Assembly: GCA_950097015.1 (NCBI GenBank)
Contig: CATNEN010000012.1
Span: 372,001 to 436,000, forward strand
Length of the DNA: 64,000 bases
Direction: 5' to 3'
Source: Macrostomum hystrix
Taxonomy: Eukaryota; Animalia; Platyhelminthes
Shown here: positions 15,711 to 48,050 of the stretch, in pieces
Position numbering within the stretch: position 1 is the first letter of the stretch
Layout: each line of letters opens with the position of its first letter
Program-made: the position numbers and the translations under genes
The notes under the pieces: generated by a model
The model's database searches: none
Seen by the model: the letters and a program-made list of their open reading frames with translations, nothing else
What the model was told of the DNA's origin: nothing

Positions 15711-18700
15711 ATGTCTGATGAGCACACGGTCAGCCTCGTCATGTCCGAGCTTAACTGCAGCGACTCCAGCCTGAAGCTGCGAGATCTGGAACTCTGCGGC
15801 AATAGTCCGCCTGCTGGCGACCTACTCGACGCTGTCAGAGCGGTCGAATCCGAAGAGCTCAGCGCCGAAGCGTTTGCAGCTGCAACTGGCGACTATCTTG
15901 ACGCGTCATTCAACTATTCGTCCGGGCAAATTCGGGTGAGTTGACTTCGGCTTTGAATGCCTCCAAGATGCTGTTGAGTTGTGTCTCCAAGATGCAGTGG
16001 AGTTGTCTCCAAGATGCTGTGGAGTTGTGTCTCCAAGATGCTGTGGAGTTGTGTCTCCAAGATGCAGTGGAGTTGTGTCTCCAAGATGCTGTGGAGTTGT
16101 GTCTCCAAGATGCTGTGGAGTTGTGTCTCCAAGATGCTGTGGAGTTGTGTCTCCAAGATGCTGTGGAGTTGTGTCTCCAAGATGCTGTGGAGTTGTGTCT
16201 CCAAGATGCTGTGGAGTTGTGTCTCCAAGATGCTGTTGAGTTGAGTCCAAGATGCTGTGGAGTTGTGTCTCCAAGATGCTGTGGAGTTGTGTCTCCAAGA
16301 TGCTGTGGAGTTGTGTCTCCAAGATGCTGTGGAGTTGTGTCTCCAAGATGCAGTGGAGTTGTGTCTCCAAGATGCTGTGGAGTTGTCTCCAAGATGCTGT
16401 GGAGTTGTGTCTCCAAGATGCTGTGGAGTTGTGTCTCCAAGATGCTGTGGAGTTGTGTCTCCAAGATGCAGTGGAGTTGTGTCTCCAAGATGCTGTGGAG
16501 TTGTGTCTCCAAGATGCTGTGGAGTTGTGTCTCCAAGATGCTGTGGAGTTGTGTCTCCAAGATGCAGTGGAGTTGTGTCTCCAAGATGCTGTGGAGTTGT
16601 GTCTCCAAGATGCTGTGGAGTTGTGTCTCCAAGATGCTGTTGAGTTGTGTCTCCAAGATGATGTTGAGTTGTGTCTCCAAGATTCAGTGGAGTTGTGTCT
16701 CCAAGATGCAGTGGAGTTGTGTCTCCAAGATGCTGTGGAGTTGTGTCTCGAATATAACTGCTATTTTTACCTGCATCCTCCAGCTACCGGACCGGGCCGT
16801 CATCAACTGCTGCTCGCTGCTTCACCAGGCCGTGGCCATAGACAATCCTGGCGCTCTGGCCCGCCTCCTGGATCGCTGGCGGCCCGCTGAGCTGGCCCCG
16901 CTGACCGCTGTGAGAATCGATAGCATCGATTTCCCAATAATCCCCATTGATTTTAACTTTCCGCTTTTTAATTATTTGCCGAAAATTACAGGAGGGCGAG
17001 ACTCCGCTCCATCTGGCCTGCCAGCTGGGGAATCCCTTCCTGGTGCGCCTGCTGGCCCGCCGGATTCCCCGACAGGTGGAAATAGCCGATTGCCATGGCA
17101 ACACGCCTTGCCACCTCGCGGCAGCGGCCGGGCCAGTTTGCGTGGCCCAGCTGTGCCTGGTGGACCGGCTGGACTGGACTGTGCGCAATCGGGTGAGCTG
17201 GCTAACTGATTTGTACTTTAAAGTGTACTTTAAACTTTAAAGCTATCTTAAAGTACTGGTGCAGTTTTGGTCCGTCTTAAAATGTACTGTTATGAATTTG
17301 TCGCCTCATGTTACAGCTGTTTCAACTGAAGCACTAGGAAATAAAGGGTATTCTTCAGGACATCATTTTCTTTGTCTTAGGTCGGGAATCGAACTCCCGA
17401 CCACTCGATCAGAACTTTAAAGCTCTAACGTTTGGGCAACTATATGTACCAGTACTAGAAGTACCATTAAAGTACAAAAAATTAGCGCAAGAAATGAGTT
17501 AGAATAGGGGTAGGCAAACTTATTTTCTGGCGGGCCAAAGAGAGAACCTAACAGACGACAGCGGGCCGCATTGACTGTATAAATATGAGATAGGGGAGAG
17601 ATGAGACACGGGAGAGATGAGACACAGGAGAGATGAGACACGGGAGAGATTAGACACGGGAGAGATGAGATACAGAAAGATGATACACGAGAGAGATGAG
17701 ACACGGGAGAGATTTAACAGGGGAGAGATTAGACACGGGAGAGATTAGACACGGGAGAGATTAGACATGGGAGAGATAAGACACGGGAGAGATTAGACAC
17801 GGGAGAGATTAGACACGGGAGAGATTAGACACGGGAGAGATTGGACACGGGAGAGATTAGACACGGGAGAGATTAGACACGGGAGAGATTAGACACGGGA
17901 GAGATTGGACACGGGAGAGATTAGACACGGGAGAGATTAGACACGGGAGAGATAAGACACGGGAGAGATTAGACACGGGAGAGATAAGACACGGGAGAGA
18001 TTAGACACGGGAGAGATTAGACACGGGAGAGATAAGACACGGGAGAGATAAGACACGGGAGAGATGAGACACGAGAGAGATGAAACAGGACGCTGTAGAT
18101 GTCAGAAGGGGCAACGGGCCGGATTTGGGAGCTTCGAGGGCCGCATCTGGCCCGCGGGCCGGAGTTTGCCGACCCCTGAGTTAGATTAATCTACGAACCT
18201 TGACTACTAGACTTGCAGCCTCTCTTGTTTTCTCTTGCGTGAAAGAGAATTTTCGCACTTGAGTGCTGAAATCCAGAGTTACAGGTACAGGCCCTTTCTC
18301 TTTAATTAAAAGTCTCCTTCACTGTCTTTCACACTCCGTCGTGTCATTCTCCCTGGCTCGCAGAATGGCAAAACTCCAGCCGACCTGGCTGAGAAGCGCA
18401 GCGAAGTTCAACAGCTAATTAGCATGTACCAAAATGTGAGCCAACATGCCTACTATGACTAGTAGAGAAGCTTTTAATGGCAGAATTACAATTTTATTTA
18501 TCTTTTTTCGTCTTGCATCACAGAAAAGCAGCGCATTTTACAAGCATCGCTGCCTAGAAGTAAAGGAGTGCTGCCGGTTTGTGGAAAAGTGAGTGGGGCC
18601 TGATGACTGTGCGAATGAAAACTTACTGGACACATGTGCGTGTGCTCAGTGTGACACCTGTCCTATTCCCCCCGCAGAGCTGAAGGCCTGTGCCATTGCG

Positions 18701-21700
18701 GACTGACAGCAGAGGAGCACCTGCACACTCAGCAGCAGCTAATAACTGTCACATTGGGCAGAAACGACAGCATCAGCAGCAGCAGCAAATGGACGGCGTC
18801 AACACACCTGATGCCAATTGTCACCGATGCGTTCGGTTGCCTAAAGATGTCTGACTATTTTTCTGCGAATGTAAGTGTATTATTTTGCTTTCAGCCTTGC
18901 TTCCGCTTTTCTTCGGTACTTAGTTTTTTTTCATTTTTTGCTTCAATTCCAAGATTTTTCTGAATTTTTATAATTTTCTCTCTTTTTATGGAATTCTCCT
19001 TTGATCGGAATTCCCCTATGATTGGAATTCCCCTTTGCTTAGAATTCCCCTATGATTGGAATTCCATGTGCTTAGAATTCATGATCGGGGAATTTAGACT
19101 TTGACTTACAATTCCCCTATTTGAAATTCCCATGCATTTATTTGTAATTTTCAGATCCTTGGTAATCCCATTTAGTTAGAATTCCCTATTACCTACAATT
19201 TCCATATCATTGGAAGTCCCAAATACTTTGACTTTCCCTTTTCGTCTAATCCCGCACGGGTGCCTCTAAACCAGGAAATCCCAATCAACAACATTCCCAC
19301 CTGTCGTTCCCGAAAGTTTGTCCGCATCTGCAGCTCCACCGAGGACGCCCAGCTCCAGTGGCTGCTGCATCAGGTGTGGCGCATTCGGCAGCCGTCCATG
19401 CTGGTGACGGTACTCGGCGGCCAGACGACCCGGACCGATTTCAGCAAAGTCTTCATGAAGGGCTTCTGGAAGGCGGCGGGCAGCTCCAGTGAGTGGCTGG
19501 TTGCAAGTTCTATTTTTAGAAGAAAAAAGCGGGAAAACCCCTCAGTAAATGACCTCAAGCGCGTGTCTGACTGACCTTGAGCAGCCAATAAAATTATTCG
19601 ATTACAGACTCTCTGGTCGTGACCGACGGTCTCAGCAAGGGCATTGTGAAGCTGGCTGGCAAAGCAGTCAGAGACTACAATGACGCCTACGGCCAGGAGC
19701 GGATTAGCTTGCTGGCTGTGTTGCCATGGAAACTGCTGCCTTATAGATCTCAGCTTTTATGTCGAGACTACAAGGTTGGAAAAAGATAATATAATTGGAA
19801 AAGCAATATTGTCTTCAGGAAGCCCATAAAAAATTAGTTTCAATATTTTATAAATCTCAGCCGTTTGCCGCAATCCTCACTCTCACAGAGCGTGTCGCGC
19901 GCGCCCCCGCCAGCGCCACCCGGCGCGTCGCCGGGCCTGGATCCCAATCACAGCTTCTTCCTATTGGTGGACGATTGCGGAGAGAATTCTGCTAATATTG
20001 CCGAGTTTAGAGCCAGAGTTGAGACTCTGCTCACCCATCTAGACGATTCTATGCCTCAGGCGCCGGCCTGCAGCATCTTGGCCAACGGAACATTAAGGGA
20101 TTTACCCAGCCTGCACAGGTTTGGAATTCCCTTTGAGCTAAAAATAGCTATGAGCTCTCTATTGGGCGTTTTCTGATTGGACGGTTGGCGTTCAGCCAAT
20201 GCTTAACGAGTCTCTTAACAGTAAAAATAACTCGGGCTATTTTGAATACCCACATTTTTCTTTTTTTCTGTATCTCCTAAAAGATTCAACCAATGGCCAT
20301 GAAAATGTAGAACACGGGCTAGAATTTTCCGCTATATTCGATGAAACACCTTCCAGAATCTCAAAACATCAGCATCGTCGAGATATTCAACAATTCTCGT
20401 CTGTATCTGGCGGCAAAATACAAATGTAGGAAAAAAGCGTTGTCTTTCTACTCACTGAGGTGTGAGTCGGGGGCTTGATATTCTTATTATCAGGTAGACC
20501 CACATGCGCTCCATTTTGCTCTGATTGGCTAAACGACTAGCGTCCAATCAGAAAGCAGCCAATTATTTAGAGTAGATATAAAAAGCCTCTCTCGCCAAAC
20601 ACTAGATGCCTCGTCCTCCGTCACTGCTCAGCGGTGCTGGTCCGGGGCTCCGGCGGCCTCGCCGACGCCGTCTGCCACCTGCTGGATCTGCAGAGCGGTG
20701 AGGTTCGCATTGAAAACGCCGCCATGCGATCGGCCGGGCTCGAAGCTCTGGCCGGCTTGACGCTGCAGAAATGGCTCTGCGCTGATCATCCGCCGGATGG
20801 GGCGGATGTCCGGATGCTGGCCGAGATCTCAGCTGCTCAGCACCTTATTGAAGTGTTCTCAGTTGAGGACGACATGGCCTCCGATTTCGACGCAAAAATT
20901 CTCGCCTCGCTGCTCGGAATATCAGCGGCGGACGGTGGCGGCGGCGCAGGCGGAAGCGGCGGCGACGCCGAAGGCGAGGACTCGGACGCCTTGAACATCG
21001 ACCAGCTGCGAGTCGCAATGTCCATTGACAGATGCGACATTGCCAGGACCAAGATCTTCACTGATGCCAAAAAGTGGATAGTGAGTTTAATATTAAAATG
21101 AGGACTTAAGACGACGATTGGCGATCGAAGGAAATGTAAGGGGATTTCTCTGAGGATATTAGGATTTCTGGAATAGAATGGATTCGACAAGAGGACAGGA
21201 ATTCAATACAGAGGATAGAGAATTAGGGAGTATAATTTGGATTCTGTTATTAGAACGGGGACTCGGGGAGGAGAATGGGGACTCGGGGAGTGGAATGGGG
21301 ACTCGGGGAGTGGAATGGGGACTCGGGGAGAGTAATGGGGATTCAGGACTCATTCAAAACTAGCAGCACTCCTCCAATCGCCTCCGAAACCCCCAGCAAA
21401 GCGACCTGGAGCCGCTGATGCTGCAGGCCCTGAGAGACAATCAGCTCGAGTTCGCAGAGCTCATGGTGGAGCAGGGCTTCAGTTTGAACAACTTCGTGAC
21501 GGACGCGATGATGCTTGAGCTGTACAGCAGGGCGCTGACTGAGCAGTCGGTAAATTGAACACTTTAAAGAACAGCGCATCGCTGGGTCTCCGAGAGACAA
21601 GCCTCGGTGCAATTAGCCTACAGTATCTACCCAATTAGCCTACAGTATCTACCCAATTAGCCTACAGTATCTACCCAATTAGCCTACAGTATCTACCCAA

Positions 21701-24700
21701 TTAGCCTACAGTATCTACCCAATTAGCCTACAGTATCTACCCAATTAGCCTACAGTATCTACCCAATTAGCCTACAGTATCTACCCAATCTCCCCTTCAC
21801 ATCCGCACAGCAGAGCAGCAGCATCTTCAGGCGTCTGGCTTCGAAGCGCTCGGCTGATACTGGCGGCGCCCGACTGCTCAGCCAGTCGGATGTTCAGGCG
21901 GCGGTGCACCAGCTGAGCCCGCCAGGCGATCTCAGAGAGTCGGCCCTCTCAGGCGGTCTGCGCGCAATCGTCTGGTGCCTGCTGACTGGCCGGTTCGGCC
22001 TGGCGCGGGCATTCTGCCTGCAGCAGCGCGAGGTCATCTCGACGTCATTATTCGCAGCCCTGCTGCTCCGGCGGGCGCGCGCATCCTGCGACAGTGTTCA
22101 GCTGCGCTCGGAGCTCGACGCGCAGGCGGCCGGATTCGAACTGCTGGCTGTTGACGTGCTCAACGACTGCTGGTCCGAGGATTCCAATCAGGCCTCTATG
22201 ACAGTTGTTCGACGTCTGCAGGCGTACGACGGCGCCACCTCCTTTGAGTTGGCAGCCGAGGGCCAGTCTCTGAGCTTCATCGCGCACCCCAGCTGCCAGA
22301 ATCTGCTGGACCTCATGTGGCGCGGCCGCATCGTCGGCCACCTCAGCGGCCTGCAGTTCCTGCTGGCTTGTCTTGTCGGCTGCGCTGCTCCCTGGCTAAT
22401 CGGCCCGCTGCTGCTGCTGCTGCTGCGTGGGACCAGGCGATTGCGCGGAGACGCGGAGGAACAGGTGGATTTCGGTTGGGATTTTCCTGAGAAAGTTTTA
22501 GGAAGATAGGAAGAGTTGAAATGGGAAGATAAGGAAGACTAGATATGGGAAGATGAGGAAGACTAGATATGGGAAGATGAGGAAGAGTAGATTGGGAAGA
22601 TGAGGAAGAGTAGATATGGGAAGATGAGGAAGAGTAGATATGGGAAGATAGGAAGAGTTGAAATGGGAAGATGAGGAAGAGTAGATATGGGAAGATAGGA
22701 AGAGTAGATATGGGAAGATCGGAAGAGTAGATATGGGAAGATAGGAAGAGTAGATATGGGAAGATAGGAAGAGTAGATATGGGAAGATAGGAAGAGTAGA
22801 TATGGGAAGATGAGGAAGAGTAGATATGGGAAGATAGGAAGAGTAGATATGGGAAGATAGGAAGAGTAGATATGGGAAGATAGGAAGAGTAGATATGGGA
22901 AGATAGGAAGAGTAGATATGGGAAGATAGGAAGAGTAGATATGGGAAGATAGGAAGAGTAGATATGGGAAGATAGGAAGAGTAGATATGGGAAGATGAGG
23001 AAGAGTAGATATGGGAAGATAGGAAGAGTAGATATGGGAAGATAGGAAGAGTTGAAATAGGAAGATAGGAAGAGTAGATATGGGAAGATAGGAAGAGTAG
23101 ATATGGGAAGATAGGAAGAGTAAATATGGGAAGATGAGGAAGAGTAGATATGGGAAGATAGGAAGAGTAAATATGGGAAGATGAGGAAGAGTAGATATGG
23201 GAAGATAGGAAGAGTAGATATGGGAAGATAGGAAGAGTAGATATGGGAAGATGAGGAAGAGTAGATATGGGAAGATGAGGAAGAGTAGATATGGGAAGAT
23301 AGGAAGAGTTGAAATGGGAAGATAGGAAGAGTAGATATGGGAAGATAGGAAGAGTTGAAATGGGAAGATAGGAAGAGTAGATATGGGAAGATAGGAAGAG
23401 TAGATATGGGAAGATAGGAAGAGTTGAAATGGGAAGATAGGAAGAGTAGATATGGGAAGATAGGAAGAGTAGATATGGGAAGATAGGAAGAGTAGATATG
23501 GGAAGATAGGAAGAGTAGATATGGGAAGATAGGAAGAGTAGATATGGGAAGATAGGAAGAGTAGATATGGGAAGATGAGGAAGAGTAGATATGGGAAGAT
23601 AGGAAGAGTAGATATGGGAAGATCGGAAGAGTAGATATGGGAAGATAGGAAGAGTAGATATGGGAAGATAGGAAGAGTAGATATGGGAAGATAGGAAGAG
23701 TAGATATGGGAAGATAGGAAGAGTAGATATGGGAAGATAGGAAGAGTAGATATGGGAAGATAGGAAGAGTAGATATGGGAAGATAGGAAGAGTAGAAATG
23801 GGAAGATAGGAAGAGTAGATATGGGAAGATAGGAAGAGTAGATATGGGAAGATGAGGAAGAGTAGATATGGGAAGATAGGAAGAGTAGATATGGGAAGAT
23901 GAGGAAGAGTAGATATGGGAAGATAGGAAGAGTAGAAATGGGAAGATAGGAAGAGTAGATATGGGAAGATAGGAAGAGTAGATATGGGAAGATGAGGAAG
24001 AGTAGATATGGGAAGATGAGGAAGAGTAGATATGGGAAGATAGGAAGAGTAGATATGGGAAGATAGGAAGAGTAGATATGGGAAGATGAGGAAGAGTAGA
24101 TATGGGAAGATGAGGAAGAGTAGATATGGGAAGATGAGGAAGAGTAGATATGGGAAGATAGGAAGAGTAGATATGGGAAGATGAGGAAGAGTAGATATGG
24201 GAAGATAGGAAGAGTTGAAATGGGAAGATAGGAAGAGTAGATATGGGAAGATAGGAAGAGTAGATATGGGAAGATAGGAAGAGTAGATATGGGAAGATAG
24301 GAAGAGTAGATATGGGAAGATAGGAAGAGTAGATATGGGAAGATAGGAAGAGTAGATATGGGAAGATAGGAAGAGTAGATATGGGAAGATAGGAAGAGTA
24401 GATATGGGAAGATAGGAAGAGTTGAAATGGGAAGATAGGAAGAGTTGAAATGGGAAGATAGGAAGAGTAGATATGGGAAGATAGGAAGAGTAGATATGGG
24501 AAGATAGGAAGAGTAGATATGGGAAGATAGGAAGAGTAGATATGGGAAGATAGGAAGAGTAGATATGGGAAGATAGGAAGAGTAGATATGGGAAGATAGG
24601 AAGAGTAGATATGGGAAGATAGGAAGAGTAGATATGGGAAGATAGGAAGAGTAGATATGGGAAGATAGGAAGAGTAGATATGGGAAGATAGGAAGAGTAG

Positions 24701-27700
24701 ATATGGGAAGATAGGAAGAGTAGATATGGGAAGATAGGAAGAGTAGATATGGGAAGATAGGAAGAGTAGATATGGGAAGATAGGAAGAGTAGATATGGGA
24801 AGATAGGAAGAGTAGATATGGGAAGATAGGAAGAGTAGATATGGGAAGATAGGAAGAGTTGAAATGGGAAGATAGGAAGAGTAGATATGGGAAGATAGGA
24901 AGAGTAGATATGGGAAGATAGGAAGAGTAGATATGGGAAGATAGGAAGAGTAGATATGGGAAGATAGGAAGAGTAGATATGGGAAGATAGGAAGAGTAGA
25001 TATGGGAAGATAGGAAGAGTAGATATGGGAAGATAGGAAGAGTAGATATGGGAAGATAGGAAGAGTAGATATGGGAAGATAGGAAGAGTAGATATGGGAA
25101 GATAGGAAGAGTAGATATGGGAAGATAGGAAGAGTAGATATGGGAAGATAGGAAGAGTAGATATGGGAAGATAGGAAGAGTTAGATATGGGAAGATAGGA
25201 AGAGTAGATATGGGAAGATAGGAAGAGTAGATATGGGAAGATAGGAAGAGTAGATATGGGAAGATAGGAAGAGTTGAAATGGGAAGATTAGGAAGAGTAG
25301 ATATGGGAAGATAGGAAGAGTAGATATGGGAAGATAGGAAGAGTTGAAATGGGAAGATGAGGAAGAGTAGATATGGGAAGATAGGAAGAGTCGAAATGGG
25401 AAGATTAGGAAGAGTAGATATGGGAAGATAGGAAGAGTTGAAATGGGAAGATTAGGAAGAGTAGATATGGGAAGATAGGAAGAGTTGAAATGGGAAGATG
25501 AGGAAGAGTAGATATGGGAAGATAGGAAGAGTTGAAATGGGAAGATGAGGAAGAGTAGATATGGGAAGATAGGAAGAGTAGATATGGGAAGATAGGAAAA
25601 GTAGATATGGGAAGATAGGAAGAGTAGATATGGGAAGATAGGAAGAGTAGATATGGGAAGATAGGAAGAGTAGAAATGGGAAGATAGGAAGAGTAGATAT
25701 GGGAAGATGAGGAAGAGTAGATATGGGAAGATAGGAAGAGTAGATATGGGAAGATAGGAAGAGTAGAAATGGGAAGATAGGAAGAGTAGATATGGGAAGA
25801 TAGGAAGAGTAGATATGGGAAGATAGGAAGAGTAGATATGGGAGATAGGAAGAGTAGATATGGGAAGATAGGAAGAGTAGATATGAGAAGATGAGGAAGA
25901 GTAGATATGGGAAGATAGGAAGAGTAGATATGGGAAGATAGGAAGAGTAGATATGGGAAGATGAGGAAGAGTAGATATGGGAAGATAGGAAGAGTAGATA
26001 TGGGAAGATGAGGAAGAGTAGATATGGGAAGATAGGAAGAGTAGATATGGGAAGATGAGGAAGAGTAGATATGGGAAGATAGGAAGAGTAGATATGGGAA
26101 TATCGGAAGAGTAGATATGGGAAGATAGGAAGAGTAGATATGGGAAGATAGGAAGAGTAGATATGGGAAGATAGGAAGAGTAGATATGGGAAGATGAGGA
26201 AGAGTAGATATGGGAAGATGAGGAAGAGTAGATATGGGAAGATAGGAAGAGTAGATATGGGAAGATAGGAAGAGTAGATATGGGAAGATAGGAAGAGTAG
26301 ATATGGGAAGATAGGAAGAGTAGATATGGGAAGATAGGAAGAGTAGATATGGGAAGATGAGGAAGAGTAGATATGGGAAGATGAGGAAGAGTAGATATGG
26401 GAAGATAGGAAGAGTAGATATGGGAAGATAGGAAGAGTAGATATGGGAAGATGAGGAAGAGTAGATATGGGAAGATAGGAAGAGTAGATATGGGAAGATA
26501 GGAAGAGTAGATATGGGAAGATGAGGAAGAGTAGATATGGGAAGATAGGAAGAGTAGAAATGGGAAGATAGGAAGAGTAGATATGGGAAGATAGGAAGAG
26601 TAGATATGGGAAGATGAGGAAGAGTAGATATGGGAAGATGAGGAAGAGTAGATATGGGAAGATAGGAAGAGTAGATATGGGAAGATAGGAAGAGTAGATA
26701 TGGGAAGATAGGAAGAGTAGATATGGGAAGATAGGAAGAGTATTGATTATAAGTCAAGATCTATAAAAGAGAGGAGAGATGGTAAGTTAAGTTTCTGAAA
26801 AATTCATTCATACCGGCAGGAGACAGCGTCTGATGAGCCACCCGAGGAGTCTAAATTGGCTGACACATTCTCGGACACTTCCGCTGCAACGGCGGACCAC
26901 AAACTTCCGACAAAGTATGCCAGACTGAAGTCGACACGGCGAAGCCGAGACCTCTGCGCTCGGCTGATTTGCGACACCTACGACTTTTATGCCACGCCTA
27001 TGATTCGCTTTTTGTATACCTCGGTGCGTGGGTGGGCAAATTTAGCTGACCCAATCTGCATCGGGTCTGGGGATAGGAGTTTTTGGTCTGAGCCAATCAG
27101 CATTGGATACCGGTGAAGGGGTTGTTGGTGTGGACCAATTAGCATAGGATCCCGGGAAGGGGTTGTTAGTCAGGACCAATTAGCATCGGATCCCAGGAAG
27201 GGGTTGTTAGTCAGGACCAATTAGCATCGGATCCCGGGAAGGGGTTGTTAGTCAGGACCAATTAGCATCGGATCCCGGGAAGGGGTTGTTAGTCAGGACC
27301 AATCAGCATCGGCCTGTTATTGAGTAAAAGTTCACCGGCTAGCCCAATCCTGGCTCAGGTGGCGTACGTGGGTTTCCTGTGTCTGTACTCCTACGTGCTG
27401 CTGTTTAACATGGGCAACACCACGGACTCGTGGAATATGGCGCACCTCCTGCTAGCGGTGTTTGTCCTCTCCTTTATGGCCGAGTCTATCAAGCAGCTGC
27501 TAGTTAGCGGAGACTCTATCGTCGGCCACCTCGGCAAAGGCTGGAACATGATGGACGCCGCCTGCATGGCCATCTTCGCCCTGGCCTCCATCATCTTCGG
27601 CCTGAGGTTTGCACCCGGCTTGCCGGACGCATTGTTCGGCGTGGACAGCTCCGGCACCGGGCTGGACACTGGCAGCGTCAAGATGATGCGCATCTGCCGC

Positions 27701-30700
27701 CTCCTGCTCGGATTGGCTCTGTTCTTTTACTTCTGCCGCCTGCTGCAGAACTTCTCCGTGCATGTCAACCTGGGCCCGAAGGTTGTCATGATTCAGACAA
27801 TGGTGAGTGGGGCTCATGATTCAGACAATGGTGAGTGGTGCTCATGATTCAGACAATGGTGAGTGAGGCTCATGATTCAGACAATGGTGAGTGGGGCTCA
27901 TGATTCAGACAATGGTGAGTGAGGCTCATGATTCGATTCCGCGGCGAGGCCACATTCATTTAGGGCGCAGCCGTGGAGAGAAGGCTTGGGGGCTTGTCGT
28001 GCAATCTGCGTCCTTGAGGGCCAACCTCCAAGGCATCGGGAAAGTTTACACTGCCTGACGATGAGAAAGTCAGGGCAGATGTACCTACCTGTGTGAGTGT
28101 GTGCACTGGAGTCAGCGGAACGGGCAGAATGCCCACAGGCCACCTGAAATGATCATTTATTCTAATTTTTGAGGCTTGTAATTCACTCAATAGTTCGTCA
28201 TTCACCAAAAACAATCAGATCATCGAGGACCTCATTCCGTTCATGGTCATCTTTCTGGTCTTCGTTCTTGGCTACGGAGTCTTTGTTTGGAGCACCATCT
28301 TCCCAATGTCCTCGTTAGACATCGGCGACTCGATGGACGCGGTGATGAGCCTGCTCAAGCTGGCCTACTTTGAGTCGTTCGGCGAGCTGCAGGTCGGCTT
28401 CATCAGCGGCGACGGTCAGAAAGGCTTTCAACAGTCTCATTTTAACAAATTCGAAAACTACTAATATTTTTTTAAGCTATATTTGTATCCCTGACCAATT
28501 TACAGTCACGACGCTAAGTGAGTCAAGGAATCGCGAATGTTTGACACGATCTGACATCCCACTGACATAATCTGACATCCCACTACTGGATCTGACATCC
28601 CACTACTGGATCTGACATCCCACTACAGGATCTGACATCCCACTGACAAAATCTGACATCCCACTGACACGACCTGACATCCCACTGACAGAATCTGACA
28701 TCCCACTGACAGAATCTGACATCCCACTGACATAATCTGACATACCACTGACGCAATCTGACACCCCACTGACACAATCTGACATCCCACTGACACAATC
28801 TGACATCCCACTGACACAATCTGACATCCCACTGACACAATCTGACATCCCACTGACACAATCTGACATCCCACTACCCGATCTGACAACTGCGACCCCT
28901 CAGCCGACTCGTGCAAGCTGAACATGACCAGCTGCCCGGACTCCTGGGGTCGCTACATTGCGCCAGTGCTGCTAGGATTTTACATCGTGTTTACCAATGT
29001 GCTGCTGCTCAACCTGCTAATCGCCATGTTCGCGTGAGCACACTAATCCTATAATTGCGCTCCCTTCTCGACGTTTATTCAATGGATTATAGAATTGAAT
29101 GATAGAATATAATAGAATAGAATTAGTTATAGAATAGAATTAAAGTTTATAGAATGGATTGCTAATCTATCCCATTGATGAAGGAATAGAATGGATTGCT
29201 AATCTATCCCATTGATGAAGGAATAGAATGGATTGCTAATCTATCCCATGGATGAAGGAATAGAATGGGTTGCTAATCTATCCCATTGATGAAGGAATAG
29301 AATGGATTGCTAATCTATCCCATGGATGAAGGAATAGAATGGATTGCTAATCTATCCCATTGATGAAGGAATAGAATGGATTGCTAATCTATCCCATAGA
29401 TGAAGGAATAGAATGGATTGCTAATCTATCCCATGGATGAAGGAATAGAATGGATTGCTAATCTATCCCATGGATGAAGGAATAGAATGGATTGCTAATC
29501 TATCCCATGGATGAAGGAATAGAATGGATTGCTAATCTATCCCATGGATGAAGGAATAGAATGGATTGCTAATCTATCCCATTGATGAAGGAATAGAATG
29601 GATTGCTAATCTATCCCATGGATGAAGGAATAGAATAGATTGCTAATCTATCCCCTGGATAAAGGAATAGAATGGATTGCTAATCTATCCCATGGATGAA
29701 GGAATAGAATAGATTGCTAATCTATCCCATTGATGAAGGAATAGAATGGATTGCTAATCTATCCCATGGATGAAGGAATAGAATGGATTGCTAATCTATC
29801 CCATGGATGAAGGAATAGAATGGATTGCTAATCTATCCCATGGATGAAGGAATAGAATAGATTGCTAATCTATCCCCTGGATAAAGGAATAGAATGGATT
29901 GCTAATCTATCCCATGGATGAAGGAATAGAATAGATTGCTAATCTATCCCATTGATGAAGGAATAGAATGGATTGCTAATCTATCCCATTGATAAAGGAA
30001 TAGAATGGATTGCTAATCTATCCCATGGATGAAGGAATAGAATGGATTGCTAATCTATCCCATTGATAAAGGAATAGAATGGATTGCTAATCTATCCCCT
30101 GGATAAAGGAATAGAATGGATTGCTAATCTATCCCATTGATAAAGGAATAGAATGGATTGCTAATCTTTCCCATGGATGAAGGAATAGAATAGATTGCAA
30201 ATCTATCCCATGGATGAAGGAATAGAATAGATTGCTAATCTATCCCCTGGATAAAGGAATAGAATGGATTGCTAATCTATCCCATGGATGAAGGAATAGA
30301 ATGGATTGCTAATCTATCCCATGGATGAAGGAATAGAATGGATTGCTAATCTATCCCATTGATAAAGGAATAGAATGGATTGCTAATCTTTCCCATGGAT
30401 GAAGGAATAGAATAGATTGCTAATCTATCCCATGGATGAAGGAATAGAATAGATTGCTAATCTATCCCCTGGATAAAGGAATAGAATGGATTGCTAATCT
30501 ATCCCATGGATGAAGGAATAGAATGGATTGCTAATCTATCCCATGGATGAAGGAATAGAATGGATTGCTAATCTTTCCCATTGATGAAGGAAAAGAATGG
30601 ATTGCTAATCTATCCCATGGATGAAGGAATAGAATGGATTGCTAATCTATCCCATGGATGAAGGAATAGAATGGATTGCTAATCTATCCCATGGATGAAG

Positions 30701-33700
30701 GAATAGAATAGATTGCTAATCTATCCCATGGATAAAGGAATAGAATGGATTGCTAATCTATCCCATGGATGAAGGAATAGAATAGATTGCTAATCTATCC
30801 CATTGATGAAGGAATAGAATGGATTGCTAATCTATCCCATTGATAAAGGAATAGAATGGATTGCTAATCTATCCCATGGATGAAGGAAAAGAATGGATTG
30901 CTAATCTATCCCATGGATGAAGGAATAGAATGGATTGCTAATCTATCCCATGGATGAAGGAATAGAATGGATTGCTAATCTATCCCATGGATGAAGGAAT
31001 AGAATAGATTGCTAATCTATCCCCTGGATAAAGGAGTAGAATGGATTGCTAATCTTTCCCATGGATGAAGGAATAGAATAGATTGCTAATCTATCCCATT
31101 GATGAAGGAATAGAATGGATTGCTAATCTATCCCATTGATAAAGGAATAGAATGGATTGCTAATCTATCCCATGGATGAAGGAATAGAATGGATTGCTAA
31201 TCTATCCCATTGATAAAGGAATAGAATGGATTGCTAATCTATCCCATGGATGAAGGAATAGAATGGATTGCTAATCTATCCCATTGATAAAGGAATAGAA
31301 TGGATTGCTAATCTTTCCCATGGATGAAGGAATAGAATAGATTGCTAATCTATCCCATGGATGAAGGAATAGAATAGATTGCTAATCTATCCCCTGGATA
31401 AAGGAATAGAATGGATTGCTAATCTATCCCATGGATGAAGGAATAGAATGGATTGCTAATCTATCCCATGGATGAAGGAATAGAATGGATTGCTAATCTT
31501 TCCCATTGATGAAGGAAAAGAATGGATTGCTAATCTATCCCATGGATGAAGGAATAGAATGGATTGCTAATCTATCCCATGGATGAAGGAATAGAATGGA
31601 TTGCTAATCTATCCCATGGATGAAGGAATAGAATAGATTGCTAATCTATCCCCTGGATAAAGGAATAGAATGGATTGCTAATCTATCCCATGGATGAAGG
31701 AATAGAATAGATTGCTAATCTATCCCATTGATGAAGGAATAGAATGGATTGCTAATCTATCCCATTGATAAAGGAATAGAATGGATTGCTAATCTATCCC
31801 ATGGATGAAGGAATAGAATGGATTGCTAATCTATCCCATTGATAAAGGAATAGAATGGATTGCTAATCTATCCCATGGATGAAGGAATAGAATGGATTGC
31901 TAATCTATCCCATTGATAAAGGAATAGAATGGATTGCTAATCTTTCCCATGGATGAAGGAATAGAATAGATTGCTAATCTATCCCATGGATGAAGGAATA
32001 GAATAGATTGCTAATCTATCCCCTGGATAAAGGAATAGAATGGATTGCTAATCTATCCCATGGATGAAGGAATAGAATGGATTGCTAATCTATCCCATTG
32101 ATAAAGGAATAGAATGGATTGCTAATCTATCCCATGGATGAAGGAATAGAATGGATTGCTAATCTATCCCATTGATAAAGGAATAGAATGGATTGCTAAT
32201 CTATCCCATGGATGAAGGAATAGAATGGATTGCTAATCTATCCCATTGATAAAGGAATAGAATGGATTGCTAATCTTTCCCATGGATGAAGGAAAAGAAT
32301 GGATTGCTAATCTTTCCCATTGATGAAGGAAAAGAATGGATTGCTAATCTATCCCATGGATGAAGGAATAGAATGGATTGCTAATCTATCCCATTGATAA
32401 AGGAATAGAATGGATTGCTAATCTTTCCCATGGATGAAGGAATAGAATAGATTGCTAATCTATCCCATTGATGAAGGAATAGAATGGATTGCTAATCTAT
32501 CCCATTGATAAAGGAATTGAATGGATTGCTAATCTATCCCATGGATGAAGGAATAGAATGGATTGCTAATCTATCCCATTGATAAAGGAATAGAATGGAT
32601 TGCTAATCTATCCCATGGATGAAGGAATAGAATAGATTGCTAATCTATCCCATGGATGAAGGAATAGAATAGATTGCTAATCTATCCCCTGGATAAAGGA
32701 ATAGAATGGATTGCTAATCTATCCCATGGATGAAGGAATAGAATGGATTGCTAATCTATCCCATTGATAAAGGAATAGAATGGATTGCTAATCTTTCCCA
32801 TGGATGAAGGAATAGAATAGATTGCTAATCTATGCCTCATGGCCTTCAACCCGCTCGGCCAGCAACACTTACGAGCGAATCCAGAGCTCCTCGGTGCAGT
32901 ACTGGACCCTGCAGCGCTACCTCATTATGCGCGAGTACACGGAGCGAAGCATCTTCCCGCCGCCCCTGTCGCTGTTGTGGAATCTGACCCTGCTGATCTA
33001 CCTGGCGATGCGCGGTAGGCGCATCTCGTTTGAGACTGACGCGCTGATGTGTCGAGTCAGTGAGTCCGGGCTATTGGACCTGTGCACAGAAATAAAACGC
33101 TTTTAAGCTACTTTTTAGCGTATCTGTAAAATTTTTCTCAAAAAATTATTTAGCATGAATGCTTTTCTCGGGTCTGCTATCGGTAATATCTGCAAATAAT
33201 TGTATTTGAAGTAGCACAATCATGCAGTTATCAAATGACAATATAGTATATCAACATTATAACAATAGCGTACAGTAATAACAAAATCTTCACTTTCAAA
33301 TTTCAGACTTCAGAGGATTTTTACGTAAGTTAAAGTAGGTTTCTGTATGTCTGTTAATCTAGCTGCGTCTTTTATATTGAACCCAAAAAAGCAAAATACT
33401 TTGATGACAGATAAATTATGACAAAATCGAAGCACTTAGATTTGATAGTGTAAGTACGCTCGCAGTTTGGTTCGAAAAAATATGCCAAGATTGATATACG
33501 AGAGTATGCCCGTAGAAAACATTGGGACCTAGCCAGCCAATCCGCGAGCAGGACTCGGGTAGACCTTGGCCCATACCCCGTGAGCGGATTTGCCAAGGGG
33601 GCGAGAGCTACGCAGGAAGGGAGAGAAGGGATAGAGGGGGAGCGAAATCGGAGCCAATAGGCGCAGACCATGGGCAAGCAAGAAAGGGGTGGGCTCAGCC

Positions 33701-36700
33701 GCAGGCCAGACAGGCCAATCAGCACTTTGCGTAATTGAACAGTGCTCTATTATCACACGTTCCCCGATACCGAATTCAAAGGCTGCATCGTTGGCGACTC
33801 CGCTGTCAGCGATGACCAGCTGGCTAAGTGGGAGGGCCTGCGCACCCAGGAGTTCCTTCGCAGGCGCCAGGAAGCCGCCAGGCAGCAGCGGAAATCACCA
33901 GGCGATCCGTCAGCCAGACGCTCCGTCCATCTGCAGCAGCTGCCGGTAGCTGGTAGCGGCTCAGACACGACAGCCTCGATGGCGGCAGCGGTGGCTGCGG
34001 CGGCTGCAGCCGCAGCTGCTACAGCCCAGCAAGTTGACTGGGACACAATGCACTCAGTGGTTCGAGTGCGCCTGCGTGAAGGCCTGCGCGACACCGAGAA
34101 GCAGCTGCGCCGGCTTGACGATGTCGACGAGAGATGCGTTGGACTGACCGAGCGAGTCGACTGCCTGCAGGAGGAGGTGCGAAGGCTCGGCTTGCGGCTG
34201 GAGCATCAGCAGGCCGCCTGTCTGGACTCGCTGAAACAGCTGCTACAGCAGACCAGGTTGGCAACACAGTCGAGCCTTTCTGCTTTAGCTTTGGAAGCTC
34301 CTTATCCTACCTGTACCTCTTTCGACCATCCTGTACCTCTATTGACCATCCTGTACCTCTATTGACCATCCTGTACCTCAATTTACCATCCTTTACCTAT
34401 ATCCTATGACTATCCAATACCTCATTTGTCTATCCCGTACATATTTAAGTATTCCGTAACGTCTGGTAAATGGTATGGACTACCTGAAGTTCATTAACTG
34501 CCAGAAATACGCTAGTATGTGTTAACACTATCAGAGACCAAACAATGCTCAAATTTACACGCGCAGCCCTCGCTCCGGCTCAACAATGATCACTACTACA
34601 GCCACCAGTTTCCGACCAACCGTGTCGCCGTCTCAGCCGCCGCCACCTCCACCGGCTTCAAGGGACAACCGGCAGACGTTAAGATACCCAGCGGCTGTCC
34701 ATCACAACAGACTGTGCGTCAGAGACTTCATATTCAGAGCTTAGATTCAGTGACGCCATCTTAAAGTTCAGTGGTGTCCTCAGGCAAGTTTAATTTTTCT
34801 CTTTCAGGGAGGTTTCGGATCCCAAGAATGCTTCCGAAGCTGCGCCCAGACTTCCGACTGCAGCCGCCGTAGCCGCCACACAAAGCGTTCGACATTCGCC
34901 GATGCGGTCACAGGCGTCGCCGCGGGAGGCCCGGCAACCGCTTCAAGATTCGAGATCTGGTGGCGCTGCTGAAAGCAGGAGGTGACCAACTGAGCCTCAC
35001 AATATTGCGTTCGCTCTCCTTTCTTTAACCTTCCTTCCTTCATTTGTGTTGTTGCTCTGGAAGATACCCGGAACCAAATTGAATTGCAGCAATTCGGTGC
35101 ATCTCTCCGAAATTGACGTCAGAAGCGCTGGCCCTAGCAGTCGCCTCTCCTCCGTGGGCGATGCTTTGCTGACTTGGACGACGCTGACCCTCATGGAGCA
35201 CCGGCTGCTGCGGTCGAGACCATTCCGCTCGGTGACAGACTCGCTGACGAACCCTGTGAGTAGCTTGAGCACGGGATTTAAAACTTTCATTCGTAGTATA
35301 CCTGGGATTTAGGATCTTGTACTTGGATCTTGGACTTGGGATCCTGGACTTGGGATCCTGGACTTGGGATCTTGGACTTGGGATCTTGGACTTGGGATCT
35401 TGGACTTAAGATCTTGGACTTGGGATCTTGGACTTGGGATCTTGGACTTGGGATCTTGGACTTGGGATCTTGGACTTGGGATCCTGGACTTGGGATCTTG
35501 GACTTGGGATCTTGGACTTGGGATCTTGGACTTGGGATCTTGGACTTGGGAGTTGCTAATAATCTGGTGTTTCGGTTGACTGGGATTTTTTTCCTCTCCA
35601 CACAGCCATCCGCAGCCGACGACCCAGCCTGGCGGGACTGGCAGCGGGACGAGCTAGGCCTAGAAGACGGCACGGCAGACGATCGCCGACTCATATTCAA
35701 CACCTTCGACTCGGCGCGGGCCCTGAACCGGCGCTCTCTGCTGAACTCCGGCATCGGCGGCTACCAGCTGAGCGCCGACGGTTGGCCGCTGCCACCATCG
35801 TCGACGACGTCAACTAGACCTGCCGAGGCGGCGCCTGGCCGAGGCCCGCTGCCACTGTGGGGCCCGAACCACTGCCTGGCTGTGCTCATCACCCGATGGA
35901 AGAGGGACGAGAGGCACAACTTAGTGAAGAAGGGCAGCCAGAAGGTGCTGCAGTACGTCAGCGTGGCTGATCACCAAGTGCCCTGGGTGAGCGACTGCCT
36001 CGTTCAATCCACGAGTTCAAAGCTTCCCCGTGACCAGGCGGCATTGTGCCTGCCTTCCTCAGAGAGGCAGTTATATGTCCCGGTTTCCATAGGAACCTCT
36101 GCATCATACTCGGGATTAGTATCTGAGTCATTGGGATTAGTGTCCGGGAGAGATTGGGATTAGTGTCCGGGAGAGATTGGGATTAGTGTCCGAGAAAGAT
36201 TGGGATTAGTATCTGAGTCATTGGGATTAGTGTCCGAGAGAGATTGGGATTAGTGTCCGAGAGAGATTGGGATTAGTATCCGAGAGAGATTGGGATAAGT
36301 GTCCGAGAGAGATTGGGATGAGTGTCCGAGAGAGATTGGGATGAGTGTCCGAGAGAGATTGGGATAAGTGTCCGAGAGAGATTGGGATAAGTGTCCGAGA
36401 GAGATTGGGATGAGTGTCTGAGAGATTGGGATTAGTGTCCGAGAGAGATTGGGATGAGTGTCTGAGAGATTGGGATTAGTGTCCGAGAGAGATTGGGATT
36501 AGTGTCTGAGAGAGATTGGGATTAGTGTCCGAGAGAGATTGGGATTAGTGTCAGAGAGATTGGGATTAGTGTCAGAGAGATTGGGATTAGTGTCAGAGAG
36601 ATTGGGATTAGTATCCGAGAGAGATTGGGATAAGTGTCCGAGAGAGATTGGGATGAGTGTCCGAGAGAGATTGGGATAAGTGTCCGAGAGAGATTGGGAT

Positions 36701-48013: not shown

Positions 48014-48050
<37 letters not shown>

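What the first reader, a model, noticed from the sequence alone, without database searches (positions are those of the whole stretch)
15711..18870. TRPM channel with true ankyrin repeats fused in frame to its N-terminus
Seen: exons 1-4 (15711-18435) encode SLLHQAVA, GETPLHLACQLG, GNTPCHLAAAAG and GKTPADLA, i.e. about 3-4 ankyrin repeats. All are phase 0, with no stop before exon 5 (KSSAFYKHRCLEVKECCRFVE) and exon 6 (LCHCGLTAEEH...TDAFG), the usual TRPM start. Known: canonical ankyrin arrays define TRPC, TRPV, TRPA and TRPN, whereas vertebrate TRPM begins with MHR/SLOG domains. Inference: an ANK-SLOG/MHR-TM-NUDT9H chimera, potentially a new gating module. I cannot exclude that lophotrochozoan TRPM/TRPS surveys already report it.
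Basis: partly seen in the sequence, partly recalled or inferred. Interest (0 to 1): 0.8.

Follow-up and report, generated by a model that had tools for sequence, protein, structure and literature searches.

The report
Flatworm TRPM2-like channel with ankyrin head
This Macrostomum flatworm gene most likely encodes a TRPM2-type ion channel with a small ankyrin-repeat domain in front of the usual TRPM sensor; the layout contradicts the textbook rule but already sits, unremarked, in public flatworm protein sets, schistosomes included.

Summary
Exons 1-4 (15711-18435) are all phase 0 with GT/AG borders. Exon 3 is a significant Pfam ankyrin match, and exons 5-6 carry the Cys-rich TRPM start. A SLOG domain, MHR4, the channel core and a NUDT9-like end follow.

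The fusion rests on comparative evidence:
- Three RNA-built Macrostomum lignano gene models align with this gene end to end and carry Ank_2 before the SLOG domain.
- In all three, the last ankyrin repeat and the pre-SLOG segment lie in one continuous exon.
- The same Ank-SLOG-channel-NUDT9H order occurs in Schistosoma (several species). Ank before SLOG also occurs in Trichobilharzia and Mesocestoides.
- The Schistosoma haematobium gene has a matching exon layout, with a phase-0 intron where this gene has intron 4.

The fusion is therefore very probably real. It is one more member of an old flatworm subfamily, not a new chimera. It also differs from TRPM_MCLZ, where ankyrin repeats replace the SLOG domain.

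The main rival is a separate ankyrin gene followed by a spliced-leader-started TRPM. It is not excluded, at least as a second isoform. The scan had already found this layout in a paralogue elsewhere in this genome (s1-316752).

The parts
15711..15935 (+). Proposed exon 1: ATG plus 75 codons, with a CGG|GTGAGT donor. It is the non-repeat N-terminal leader.
   Evidence: Read from the sequence. No Pfam match and no significant similarity to the closest relative P0002. This exon is inferred only.
15961..16749 (.). 24-nt minisatellite, about 33 copies, filling intron 1.
   Evidence: Tandem Repeats Finder.
16784..16909 (+). Exon 2: ankyrin repeat 1 (..CCSLLHQAVAIDN..), phase 0.
   Evidence: Translation. 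Aligns with repeat 1 of P0022, P0006 and P0026 in alignment A1. Not significant alone in Pfam.
16992..17192 (+). Exon 3: ankyrin repeats 2 and 3, phase 0.
   Evidence: Pfam Ank E 1.1e-10 (41.5 bits against a cut-off of 21.1), plus Ank_2 and Ank_3. 48% identical to P0022 residues 140-197, E 1e-11. The intron before EG-TPLH sits at the same place as in the M. lignano paralogues and in S. haematobium.
17594..18081 (.). 16-nt minisatellite, about 31 copies, inside intron 3.
   Evidence: Tandem Repeats Finder. No inverted repeat and no tRNA were found around it.
18364..18435 (+). Exon 4: capping ankyrin half-repeat (NGKTPADLA..), phase 0, followed by a GTGAGC donor.
   Evidence: Translation. It corresponds to the SGRSALDCA, EGKTILNYL and KFQTPVHYA cap of relatives.
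18436..18523 (+). Intron 4, 88 nt: the ankyrin/TRPM boundary. If left unspliced, the ankyrin frame stops at 18460-18462. There are in-frame ATGs for exon 5 at 18446 and 18455.
   Evidence: Sequence and frame scan. The donor fits the M. lignano cis consensus GT[G/A]AG. The acceptor TCACAG does not fit the trans-splice motif [T/C]TNCAG. By eye there is no AATAAA or ATTAAA. A phase-0 intron at the corresponding place exists in S. haematobium and is absent in three M. lignano paralogues.
18524..18588 (+). Exon 5: pre-MHR segment (KSSAFYKHRCLEVKECCRFVE), with no ATG of its own.
   Evidence: Translation. A homologous separate exon exists in S. haematobium (KNLSLTWIPLNIKTPVC...).
18678..18870 (+). 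Exon 6: Cys-rich CxCG..H motif and the ..TDAFG motif that precedes the SLOG domain.
   Evidence: Translation. Aligns with the same motifs in P0022, P0026, P0027, P0030 and P0002.
19317..20118 (+). Exons 7-9 (19317 or 19275 to 19488; 19608-19774; 19889-20118): the SLOG/MHR1-2 domain.
   Evidence: Pfam LSDAT_euk profile positions 2-186 across the three exons. In all relatives this exon starts at F/Y-x-R-V, which favours 19317.
20606..22464 (+). Exons 10-12 (20606-21080; 21397-21549; 21811-22464): MHR2-4 and pre-S1.
   Evidence: PF25508 TRPM2-like domain, E 9e-10 and 5e-16. Best solved relative is Nematostella TRPM2, 6co7, E 4e-16.
26943..33037 (+). Transmembrane core exons (about 26943-27023, 27347-27805, 28210-28413, 28903-29094, 32861-33037).
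   Evidence: tblastn of P0022, P0006 and P0008. Ion_trans E 2.9e-4 on 28867-29034.
35546..38740 (+). NUDT9-homology C-terminus (exons about 35546-36127, one near 37800-37950, and 38516-38740; stop at 38741-38743).
   Evidence: phmmer against solved structures: NUDT9 1q33 at 4.8e-6 and the TRPM2 chanzyme at 2.6e-5. tblastn of P0022 and P0006. By eye the Nudix box looks degenerate.

Best explanation
The window holds one gene, about 15.7-38.7 kb on the + strand, for a flatworm TRPM2-like ('nudix subclade') channel subunit.

Its first coding exons (2-4) build a small ankyrin domain of three repeats plus a capping half-repeat. An ordinary 88-nt phase-0 cis-intron (18436-18523) most likely joins that domain to the complete canonical TRPM protein: the Cys-rich pre-MHR motif, SLOG/MHR1-2, MHR3-4, six transmembrane helices and a C-terminal NUDT9-homology domain.

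The ankyrin domain is added to the SLOG domain and does not replace it. The layout is inherited: it is shared with paralogues in Macrostomum lignano and with relatives in trematodes and a cestode, so it predates the split of macrostomids from the parasitic flatworms.

Inferred, not shown: the ankyrin head hangs on a long, poorly conserved linker at the periphery of the cytoplasmic ring. It probably serves as a docking or anchoring module for partner proteins, or for a neighbouring cytoplasmic domain. It is less likely to be a rigid part of the gate. The NUDT9H Nudix box looks degenerate, so that domain more likely binds ligand than hydrolyses it.
For: Shown for this locus:
- Exon borders, phases and peptides.
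- Exon 3 is a Pfam Ank match at 1e-10.
- SLOG, TRPM2-like and Ion_trans domains lie downstream, and a NUDT9 match at 5e-6.

Shown in relatives:
- M. lignano GenBank models P0006 (Mlig003066g1), P0020 (Mlig009389g3) and P0022 (Mlig025325g2) align with the window gene from the ankyrin exon onward; P0006 and P0022 reach the last exon.
- These models show Ank_2 followed by LSDAT_euk, TRPM2 and Ion_trans.
- They come from an RNA-seq-built annotation whose transcripts were cut at experimentally mapped spliced-leader and poly(A) sites (PMC5730564).
- In P0006 and P0020 one AG...GT-flanked exon (L001:4771-5022 and L003:7451-7702) runs from the ankyrin cap to the FG motif just before the SLOG domain. 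In P0022 one exon (L002:4996-5196) holds the cap plus the pre-MHR segment.
- Ank_2 lies N-terminal to LSDAT_euk by about 130 residues in Schistosoma rodhaini P0026, Trichobilharzia regenti P0027 and Mesocestoides corti P0030. P0026 stands for a cluster of 26 sequences from several Schistosoma species, including S. haematobium XP_035590190.1.
- P0026 ends in a NUDT9-like domain, E 7e-15.
- The S. haematobium exon order (cap | phase-0 intron | pre-MHR exon | CxC exon | SLOG exon) mirrors window exons 4-7.

Splice signals:
- The donor GTGAG at 18436 fits the cis consensus.
- The acceptor has an upstream cis donor, which disfavours trans-splicing.
- The acceptor does not fit the trans-acceptor motif (PMC8629364).
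- Intron 4 (88 nt) is the same size class as introns 2 (82 nt) and 5 (89 nt).

Structure: an AlphaFold model of P0022:100-600 gives confident ankyrin helix pairs and a confident SLOG fold that matches TRPM MHR1/2 structures at E 1e-16. About 100 low-confidence residues lie between them.
Against:
- No public protein is the product of this gene. The closest, P0002, is about 70% identical and comes from an old, error-rich assembly. Its model skips exon 4.
- Exon 5 opens in phase 0 right at an acceptor and has no ATG. That is also what a spliced-leader-started gene looks like in this genus.
- The unspliced ankyrin frame reaches a stop 25 nt into intron 4.
- Exon-level trees do not firmly place the window gene inside the ankyrin-bearing clade.
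- The functional role of the ankyrin head is pure inference.
Confidence: 0.78

Rival explanations
1. There are two genes in an operon-like pair. Exons 1-4 would make a small stand-alone ankyrin protein that reads into intron 4 and stops at 18460-18462. The TRPM mRNA would then be trans-spliced at the 18523/18524 acceptor and start at the AUG that ends the Macrostomum spliced leader (M + KSSAFYK...). A weaker form of this rival: such a short isoform exists beside the fused one.
For: - The M. lignano spliced leader is 35 nt and ends in ATG. About 30% of genes are trans-spliced, and intergenic distances within operons peak near 100 bp (PMC8629364).
- The gap from stop to acceptor here would be 61 nt.
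- Exon 5 starts in phase 0 at an acceptor and lacks an ATG.
- Earlier scan notes report leader-donated start codons elsewhere in this genome (leads only).
Against: - The acceptor has a consensus cis donor 88 nt upstream. By the rule quoted in PMC8629364, that favours cis-splicing.
- The acceptor TCACAG does not fit the enriched trans motif [T/C]TNCAG.
- There is no AATAAA or ATTAAA between 18436 and 18523 (by eye).
- In three paralogues the same boundary lies inside one exon, and their RNA-built models were not cut there by spliced-leader evidence.
- A capping half-repeat ending in a nine-residue read-through tail is conserved nowhere.
Confidence: 0.1
2. An internal promoter or alternative first exon is used. 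The main TRPM transcript would start inside intron 3 or 4 and be translated from the in-frame ATG at 18446 or 18455. The ankyrin exons would then be used rarely or not at all.
For: The frame of exon 5 is open from 18440 and holds two ATGs (ANMPTMTS...). TRPM genes of flatworms are reported to have many possible splice forms (PMC11731825).
Against: - The extra 26-residue leader (MPTMTSREAFNGRITILFIFFRLASQ) is pyrimidine-tract translation with no counterpart in any relative.
- The ankyrin exons are intact, in frame and 48% identical to a paralogue's, which argues that they are used.
Confidence: 0.06
3. This is a decaying duplicate. The locus would be a non-functional paralogue whose exons still look intact, so the fusion would be historical only.
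For: - The genus has recent genome duplication and many near-copies (PMC5730564).
- No public protein equals this gene.
- Introns are swollen with minisatellites.
- The window exon has an unusual amino-acid make-up in the MHR4 tree.
Against: No stop or frameshift was seen in any of the exons mapped. All splice sites checked are canonical. Conserved motifs are kept (CxCG..H, FG, the SLOG core, WGPNH in NUDT9H).
Confidence: 0.05

Closest known systems
Schistosome 'nudix subclade' TRPM paralogue (S. haematobium XP_035590190.1, 1760 aa; the P0026 cluster) and M. lignano BOX15_Mlig025325g2, Mlig003066g1 and Mlig009389g3
   Same: - Same order of parts: 3-4 N-terminal ankyrin repeats, linker with a CxC..H motif, SLOG, MHR4, 6TM. 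A NUDT9-like end was tested for P0026; the window's last exons align with the C-termini of P0022 and P0006.
- The ankyrin exons are homologous and share intron positions.
   Different: - Only about 30-50% identical.
- The window gene keeps an intron at the ankyrin/TRPM boundary that the three M. lignano paralogues lack.
- None of these is its orthologue.
- The subfamily is annotated in databases, but I found no paper that discusses the ankyrin head.
TRPM2 of Nematostella, choanoflagellate and vertebrates (solved structures 6co7, 8sr7, 6pus)
   Same: SLOG/MHR1-2, MHR3-4, the TRPM channel core and a C-terminal NUDT9-homology domain. These are the best solved-structure matches.
   Different: - These proteins start with the Cys-rich segment and have no N-terminal ankyrin domain.
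- The window's Nudix box looks degenerate, so chanzyme activity is doubtful (by eye).
TRPM_MCLZ (Smp_333650), the schistosome meclonazepam target, and its many Macrostomum relatives
   Same: It is a flatworm TRPM-type channel with N-terminal ankyrin repeats (PMC11731825, PMC12861061).
   Different: In TRPM_MCLZ the ankyrin repeats stand in place of the SLOG/MHR1-2 domain and there is no NUDT9H. Here both the SLOG domain and NUDT9H are present.
TRPM_PZQ (Smp_246790), the praziquantel target
   Same: It is a flatworm TRPM with SLOG and NUDT9H (PMC11731825).
   Different: - The probable PZQ-type protein in my set (P0019, 2242 aa; identification by size and source only) has LSDAT_euk from residue 50 and no ankyrin match.
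- It forms a separate clade, support 99/100, in the MHR4 exon tree.

Membership tests
TRPM channel | N-terminal SLOG / MHR1-2 domain | tested here: met
   Pfam LSDAT_euk on exons 7, 8 and 9 covers profile positions 2-186. Exon 7 alone reaches the gathering score, 25.9 against 25.7.
TRPM channel | MHR3-4 / TRPM2-like domain before the pore | tested here: met
   PF25508, E 8.7e-10 and 4.7e-16. 62 solved TRPM chains matched.
TRPM channel | Six-helix cation channel core with a TRP helix | tested here: inconclusive
   Ion_trans reaches only 20.5 bits on one exon, below the cut-off of 25. The TM exons align at 40-50% with the Ion_trans regions of P0006 and P0022. The TRP helix and coiled coil were not examined.
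TRPM2-like / nudix subclade | C-terminal NUDT9-homology domain | tested here: met
   window:35552-36160 matches NUDT9 (1q33) at 4.8e-6 and the NUDT9H of TRPM2 chains.
TRPM2-like / nudix subclade | Intact Nudix box (catalytic REFxEE) | tested here: inconclusive
   By eye only. The candidate exon near 37800-37950 reads ..LSWLQESIIEEA.., and relatives are similarly degenerate.
Ankyrin-repeat domain | Repeats that pass the curated profile thresholds | tested here: met
   Exon 3: Ank 41.5 bits (cut-off 21.1), Ank_3 34.8 (22.3), Ank_2 35.4 (27.3). The model of paralogue P0022 shows three helix pairs at pLDDT about 80, plus a cap helix.
Flatworm ANK-SLOG TRPM subfamily | The ankyrin domain is homologous to that of the subfamily and shares its intron positions | tested here: met
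   48% identity to P0022, E 1e-11. The intron before EG-TPLH and the intron before F-x-R-V are shared with M. lignano and S. haematobium genes.
Flatworm ANK-SLOG TRPM subfamily | Ankyrin and TRPM parts lie on one mRNA and one polypeptide at this locus | not testable with these tools
Only indirect support exists: the boundary lies inside one exon in three paralogues, and the splice signals fit cis-splicing.
TRPM_MCLZ-type channel | Ankyrin repeats in place of SLOG/MHR1-2, and no NUDT9H | tested here: not met
   Both the SLOG domain and NUDT9H are present.
Spliced-leader operon pair | A downstream acceptor with no cis donor upstream, plus a poly(A) site for the upstream gene | tested here: not met
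   A consensus donor lies 88 nt upstream. No canonical poly(A) signal lies in between. The acceptor does not fit [T/C]TNCAG. Leader-bearing reads could not be looked for.

The most novel reading that the evidence does not exclude
Flatworms as a whole, from Macrostomum to schistosomes and a tapeworm, keep an undescribed TRPM2-like subfamily. In it a true ankyrin domain was added in front of the SLOG domain. That contradicts the repeated statement that TRPM is the one group-1 TRP family without ankyrin repeats. In this reading the ankyrin head is a regulatory input to gating, for example by docking on MHR or NUDT9H or on a partner protein. That would make the subfamily a distinct, possibly druggable, channel class in parasites.
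Probability: 0.3. Interest if true: 0.6.

Novelty: new member of a known kind. Interest (0 to 1): 0.4.

Why it matters
TRP reviews and surveys state that TRPM lacks ankyrin repeats (PMC7306681, PMC12980990). They reconstruct an ankyrin-free TRPM/TRPS ancestor.

This gene and its relatives show that one flatworm lineage of TRPM2-like channels carries a real ankyrin domain in addition to the SLOG domain and NUDT9H. The same lineage exists in schistosomes, where two other TRPM channels are the targets of praziquantel and meclonazepam.

A free-living, transgenesis-ready Macrostomum species offers a way to ask what the ankyrin head does.

For this window alone the gain is modest. It is one more paralogue, and its transcript structure is still unverified.

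Tried and rejected
- Word search with exon 6, for short spliced fragments of 35-112 aa: no candidate.
- Word search with P0006 as a whole: only one further ankyrin-bearing model and one distant protein, swamped by common words.
- Big profile-free search with exon 10: only 19 hits, because that exon is poorly conserved (no Pfam match). It still delivered the key paralogues.
- ESM Atlas search with P0022:90-620: only generic ankyrin clusters below 0.9, no use.
- P0002, the closest relative: no contig on record, so its gene structure could not be read.
- Exon 1 against P0002: no significant similarity.
- Exon-level trees (MHR4 exon and TM exon, built separately): the window groups with noisy old-assembly models. 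Its place relative to the ankyrin clade is unresolved. Rows that gave no hit: Adineta in the MHR4 tree; P0014 and P0001 in the TM tree.
- Foldback or MITE reading of intron 3: no inverted repeat and no tRNA.
- TRPM_MCLZ membership, suggested by earlier scan notes on other loci: rejected here because SLOG and NUDT9H are present.
All searches were exon by exon, by reference. The 1,906-aa model length is therefore unchecked.

Full report
**What is in the sequence**

- Exon 1 (15711-15935) starts with ATG and has 75 codons.
- Exon 2 (16784-16909) has 42 codons, exon 3 (16992-17192) has 67, and exon 4 (18364-18435) has 24.
- All four are multiples of three and are flanked by GT...AG.
- Exon 5 (18524-18588, 65 nt) gives KSSAFYKHRCLEVKECCRFVE.
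- Exon 6 (18678-18870) gives the CxCG..H and TDAFG motifs.

Introns 1 and 3 are swollen by a 24-nt and a 16-nt minisatellite. Introns 2, 4 and 5 are 82, 88 and 89 nt.

**Domains**

- Exon 3 alone passes the Pfam thresholds for Ank, Ank_2 and Ank_3 (E 1e-10).
- Exons 2 and 4 are too short to score. They align with repeat 1 and the capping repeat of relatives.
- Exons 7-9 cover positions 2-186 of LSDAT_euk, the TRPM SLOG domain.
- Exons 11-12 match the TRPM2-like domain PF25508, and a pore exon gives a weak Ion_trans match.
- The C-terminal exons match NUDT9 and the NUDT9H of TRPM2 chains.
- The best solved relative of the MHR4 exon is Nematostella TRPM2.

The gene ends at about 38740. A P5-type ATPase gene starts near 40243. 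So this is a complete TRPM2-type gene, and the ankyrin exons would be added to the SLOG domain, not put in its place.

**The open question and its rival**

Earlier scan notes place the genome in Macrostomum. In M. lignano:
- about 30% of genes receive a 35-nt spliced leader that ends in ATG;
- intergenic gaps within operons peak near 100 bp (PMC8629364).

Exon 5 opens in phase 0 at an acceptor and has no ATG. If intron 4 is not removed, the ankyrin frame stops at 18460-18462, 61 nt before that acceptor. The same DNA could therefore encode a small ankyrin protein plus a leader-started TRPM.

The direct test is RNA reads across 18435/18524. 

**Comparative evidence**

I searched exon by exon, by reference, and never joined the exons. 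The joined model and its 1,906-aa length are therefore unchecked.

*The hits.* The library-wide search with exon 10 and the follow-up word searches gave three M. lignano GenBank models:
- P0006, Mlig003066g1, 1781 aa;
- P0020, Mlig009389g3, 1457 aa;
- P0022, Mlig025325g2, 1889 aa.

P0022 and P0006 align with the window gene from the ankyrin exon 3 to the last NUDT9H exon; P0020 aligns from exon 3 through the channel core. All three show Ank_2, then LSDAT_euk, TRPM2 and Ion_trans.

*How the models were built.* That annotation was built from RNA-seq. Its transcripts were cut wherever leader-bearing or poly(A) reads mapped (PMC5730564). These are therefore single mRNAs.

*Shared exons.* Exact mapping of the proteins on their loci shows:
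- In P0006 and P0020 one exon (L001:4771-5022; L003:7451-7702) runs from the ankyrin cap (SGRSALDCAREAG...) to the FG motif directly before the SLOG domain.
- In P0022 one exon (L002:4996-5196) holds the cap and the pre-MHR segment.

In these paralogues the fusion needs no splice at all.

*Beyond Macrostomum.* The same order of parts is found in:
- Schistosoma rodhaini P0026, a cluster of 26 sequences from several Schistosoma species, including S. haematobium XP_035590190.1;
- Trichobilharzia regenti P0027;
- Mesocestoides corti P0030.

In each, Ank_2 lies about 130 residues before LSDAT_euk. P0026 ends in a NUDT9-like domain, E 7e-15.

*Gene structure.* The 98-kb S. haematobium gene has these exons in order: ankyrin repeat 2, repeat 3, the cap, a phase-0 intron, a pre-MHR exon, a CxC exon, and a SLOG exon starting at FIRV. 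This mirrors window exons 3-7, including an intron where the window has intron 4.

The intron before EG-TPLH is shared by all. The SLOG exon starts at F/Y-x-R-V in all relatives, which suggests that the window's exon 7 starts at 19317 and not at 19275.

**Splice signals**

- The donor at 18436 (GTGAG) fits the M. lignano cis consensus GT[G/A]AG.
- The acceptor TCACAG does not fit the trans-acceptor motif [T/C]TNCAG.
- The acceptor has a cis donor upstream. By the rule quoted in PMC8629364, that favours cis-splicing.
- I see no AATAAA or ATTAAA in the 88 nt.

**Weighing**

The fusion at this locus is very probable (about 0.78) but inferred. A leader-started short isoform beside it cannot be excluded. 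Further weak points:
- Exon 1 has no homology support.
- No public protein is this gene's product.
- The nearest protein, P0002, comes from an old, error-rich assembly, is about 70% identical, and skips exon 4.
- Exon-level trees leave the gene's exact place unresolved. They do separate a no-ankyrin clade of flukes that I take, by size and source only, for the praziquantel-target type.

**Mechanism**

An AlphaFold model of P0022:100-600, built on seven sequences (mean pLDDT 62), gives:
- confident ankyrin helix pairs;
- a confident SLOG fold that matches TRPM MHR1/2 structures at E 1e-16;
- about 100 low-confidence residues, including the Cys-rich motif, between the two.

I read the ankyrin head as a flexibly tethered docking module at the rim of the cytoplasmic ring. 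This is inference only. By eye, the Nudix box is degenerate in the window and in relatives.

**Comparison with what is known**

- TRPM_MCLZ has ankyrin repeats instead of SLOG and has no NUDT9H (PMC11731825, PMC12861061). This gene is not of that type.
- Surveys state that TRPM lacks ankyrin repeats (PMC7306681; PMC12980990).
- A 2026 study of TRPM domain gains and losses does not mention flatworms.
- A 2024 review draws domain cartoons of the other schistosome TRPM paralogues, with an ankyrin colour in the legend, but does not discuss an ANK+SLOG member.

The layout therefore sits annotated in databases without comment. An earlier report of this scan reached the same verdict on a paralogue elsewhere in this genome (s1-316752).

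**Verdict**

The architecture is supported by homology but not yet by RNA. The gene is a new member of an existing, little-noticed flatworm subfamily, and the interest is moderate.

Noticed in passing
window 15961-16749 and 17594-18081: Two long, very regular minisatellites fill introns 1 and 3 of the TRPM gene. The first has a 24-nt unit in about 33 copies, and the second a 16-nt unit in about 31 copies. The 24-nt array is open in all three + frames, so ORF lists show long false 'proteins' there.
   Followed up: partly
window 18440-18523: Intron 4 is open in the frame of exon 5 and holds two in-frame ATGs (18446 and 18455). An unspliced or internally started transcript could therefore still make an ankyrin-less channel.
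   Followed up: no
window 19275-19317: There are two possible phase-0 acceptors for exon 7. All relatives start this exon at F/Y-x-R-V, which favours 19317 and would drop 14 residues (EIPINNIPTCRSRK) from a model that uses 19275.
   Followed up: partly
window 35900-38740: The NUDT9H Nudix box looks degenerate. The window reads ..LSWLQESIIEEA.. where NUDT9 has the REFxEE motif, and the M. lignano and schistosome relatives look similar. The domain may bind ligand but not hydrolyse it. Large repeat arrays interrupt its exons.
   Followed up: no
window 40243-54000: A P5-type cation-transporting ATPase gene lies on the + strand directly downstream (P5-ATPase domain E 2e-14 at 40243-40542). Its introns also hold long coding-looking tandem arrays.
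   Followed up: no
window 22500-26800: The large intron between the MHR4 exon and the first TM exon has extreme G over C skew, up to 0.997 in 24001-26000. This suggests a long purine-rich simple repeat.
   Followed up: no
P0005 (NCBI MGH0117658.1, Acipenser sinensis, flagged UNVERIFIED_CONTAM): This is a 2355-aa model with 7-9 tandem SLOG/TRPM2-domain matches and no channel. It looks like a mis-joined array of TRPM gene fragments in a contaminant contig.
   Followed up: no
P0003 and P0008 (M. lignano, old assembly): UniProt names these TRPM fragments 'ANK_REP_REGION domain-containing'. P0003 covers only MHR2-3, which corresponds to window exons 10-11. The PROSITE ankyrin profile seems to fire on the divergent ankyrin-like MHR3 region there, so that label alone does not prove an N-terminal ankyrin head.
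   Followed up: no
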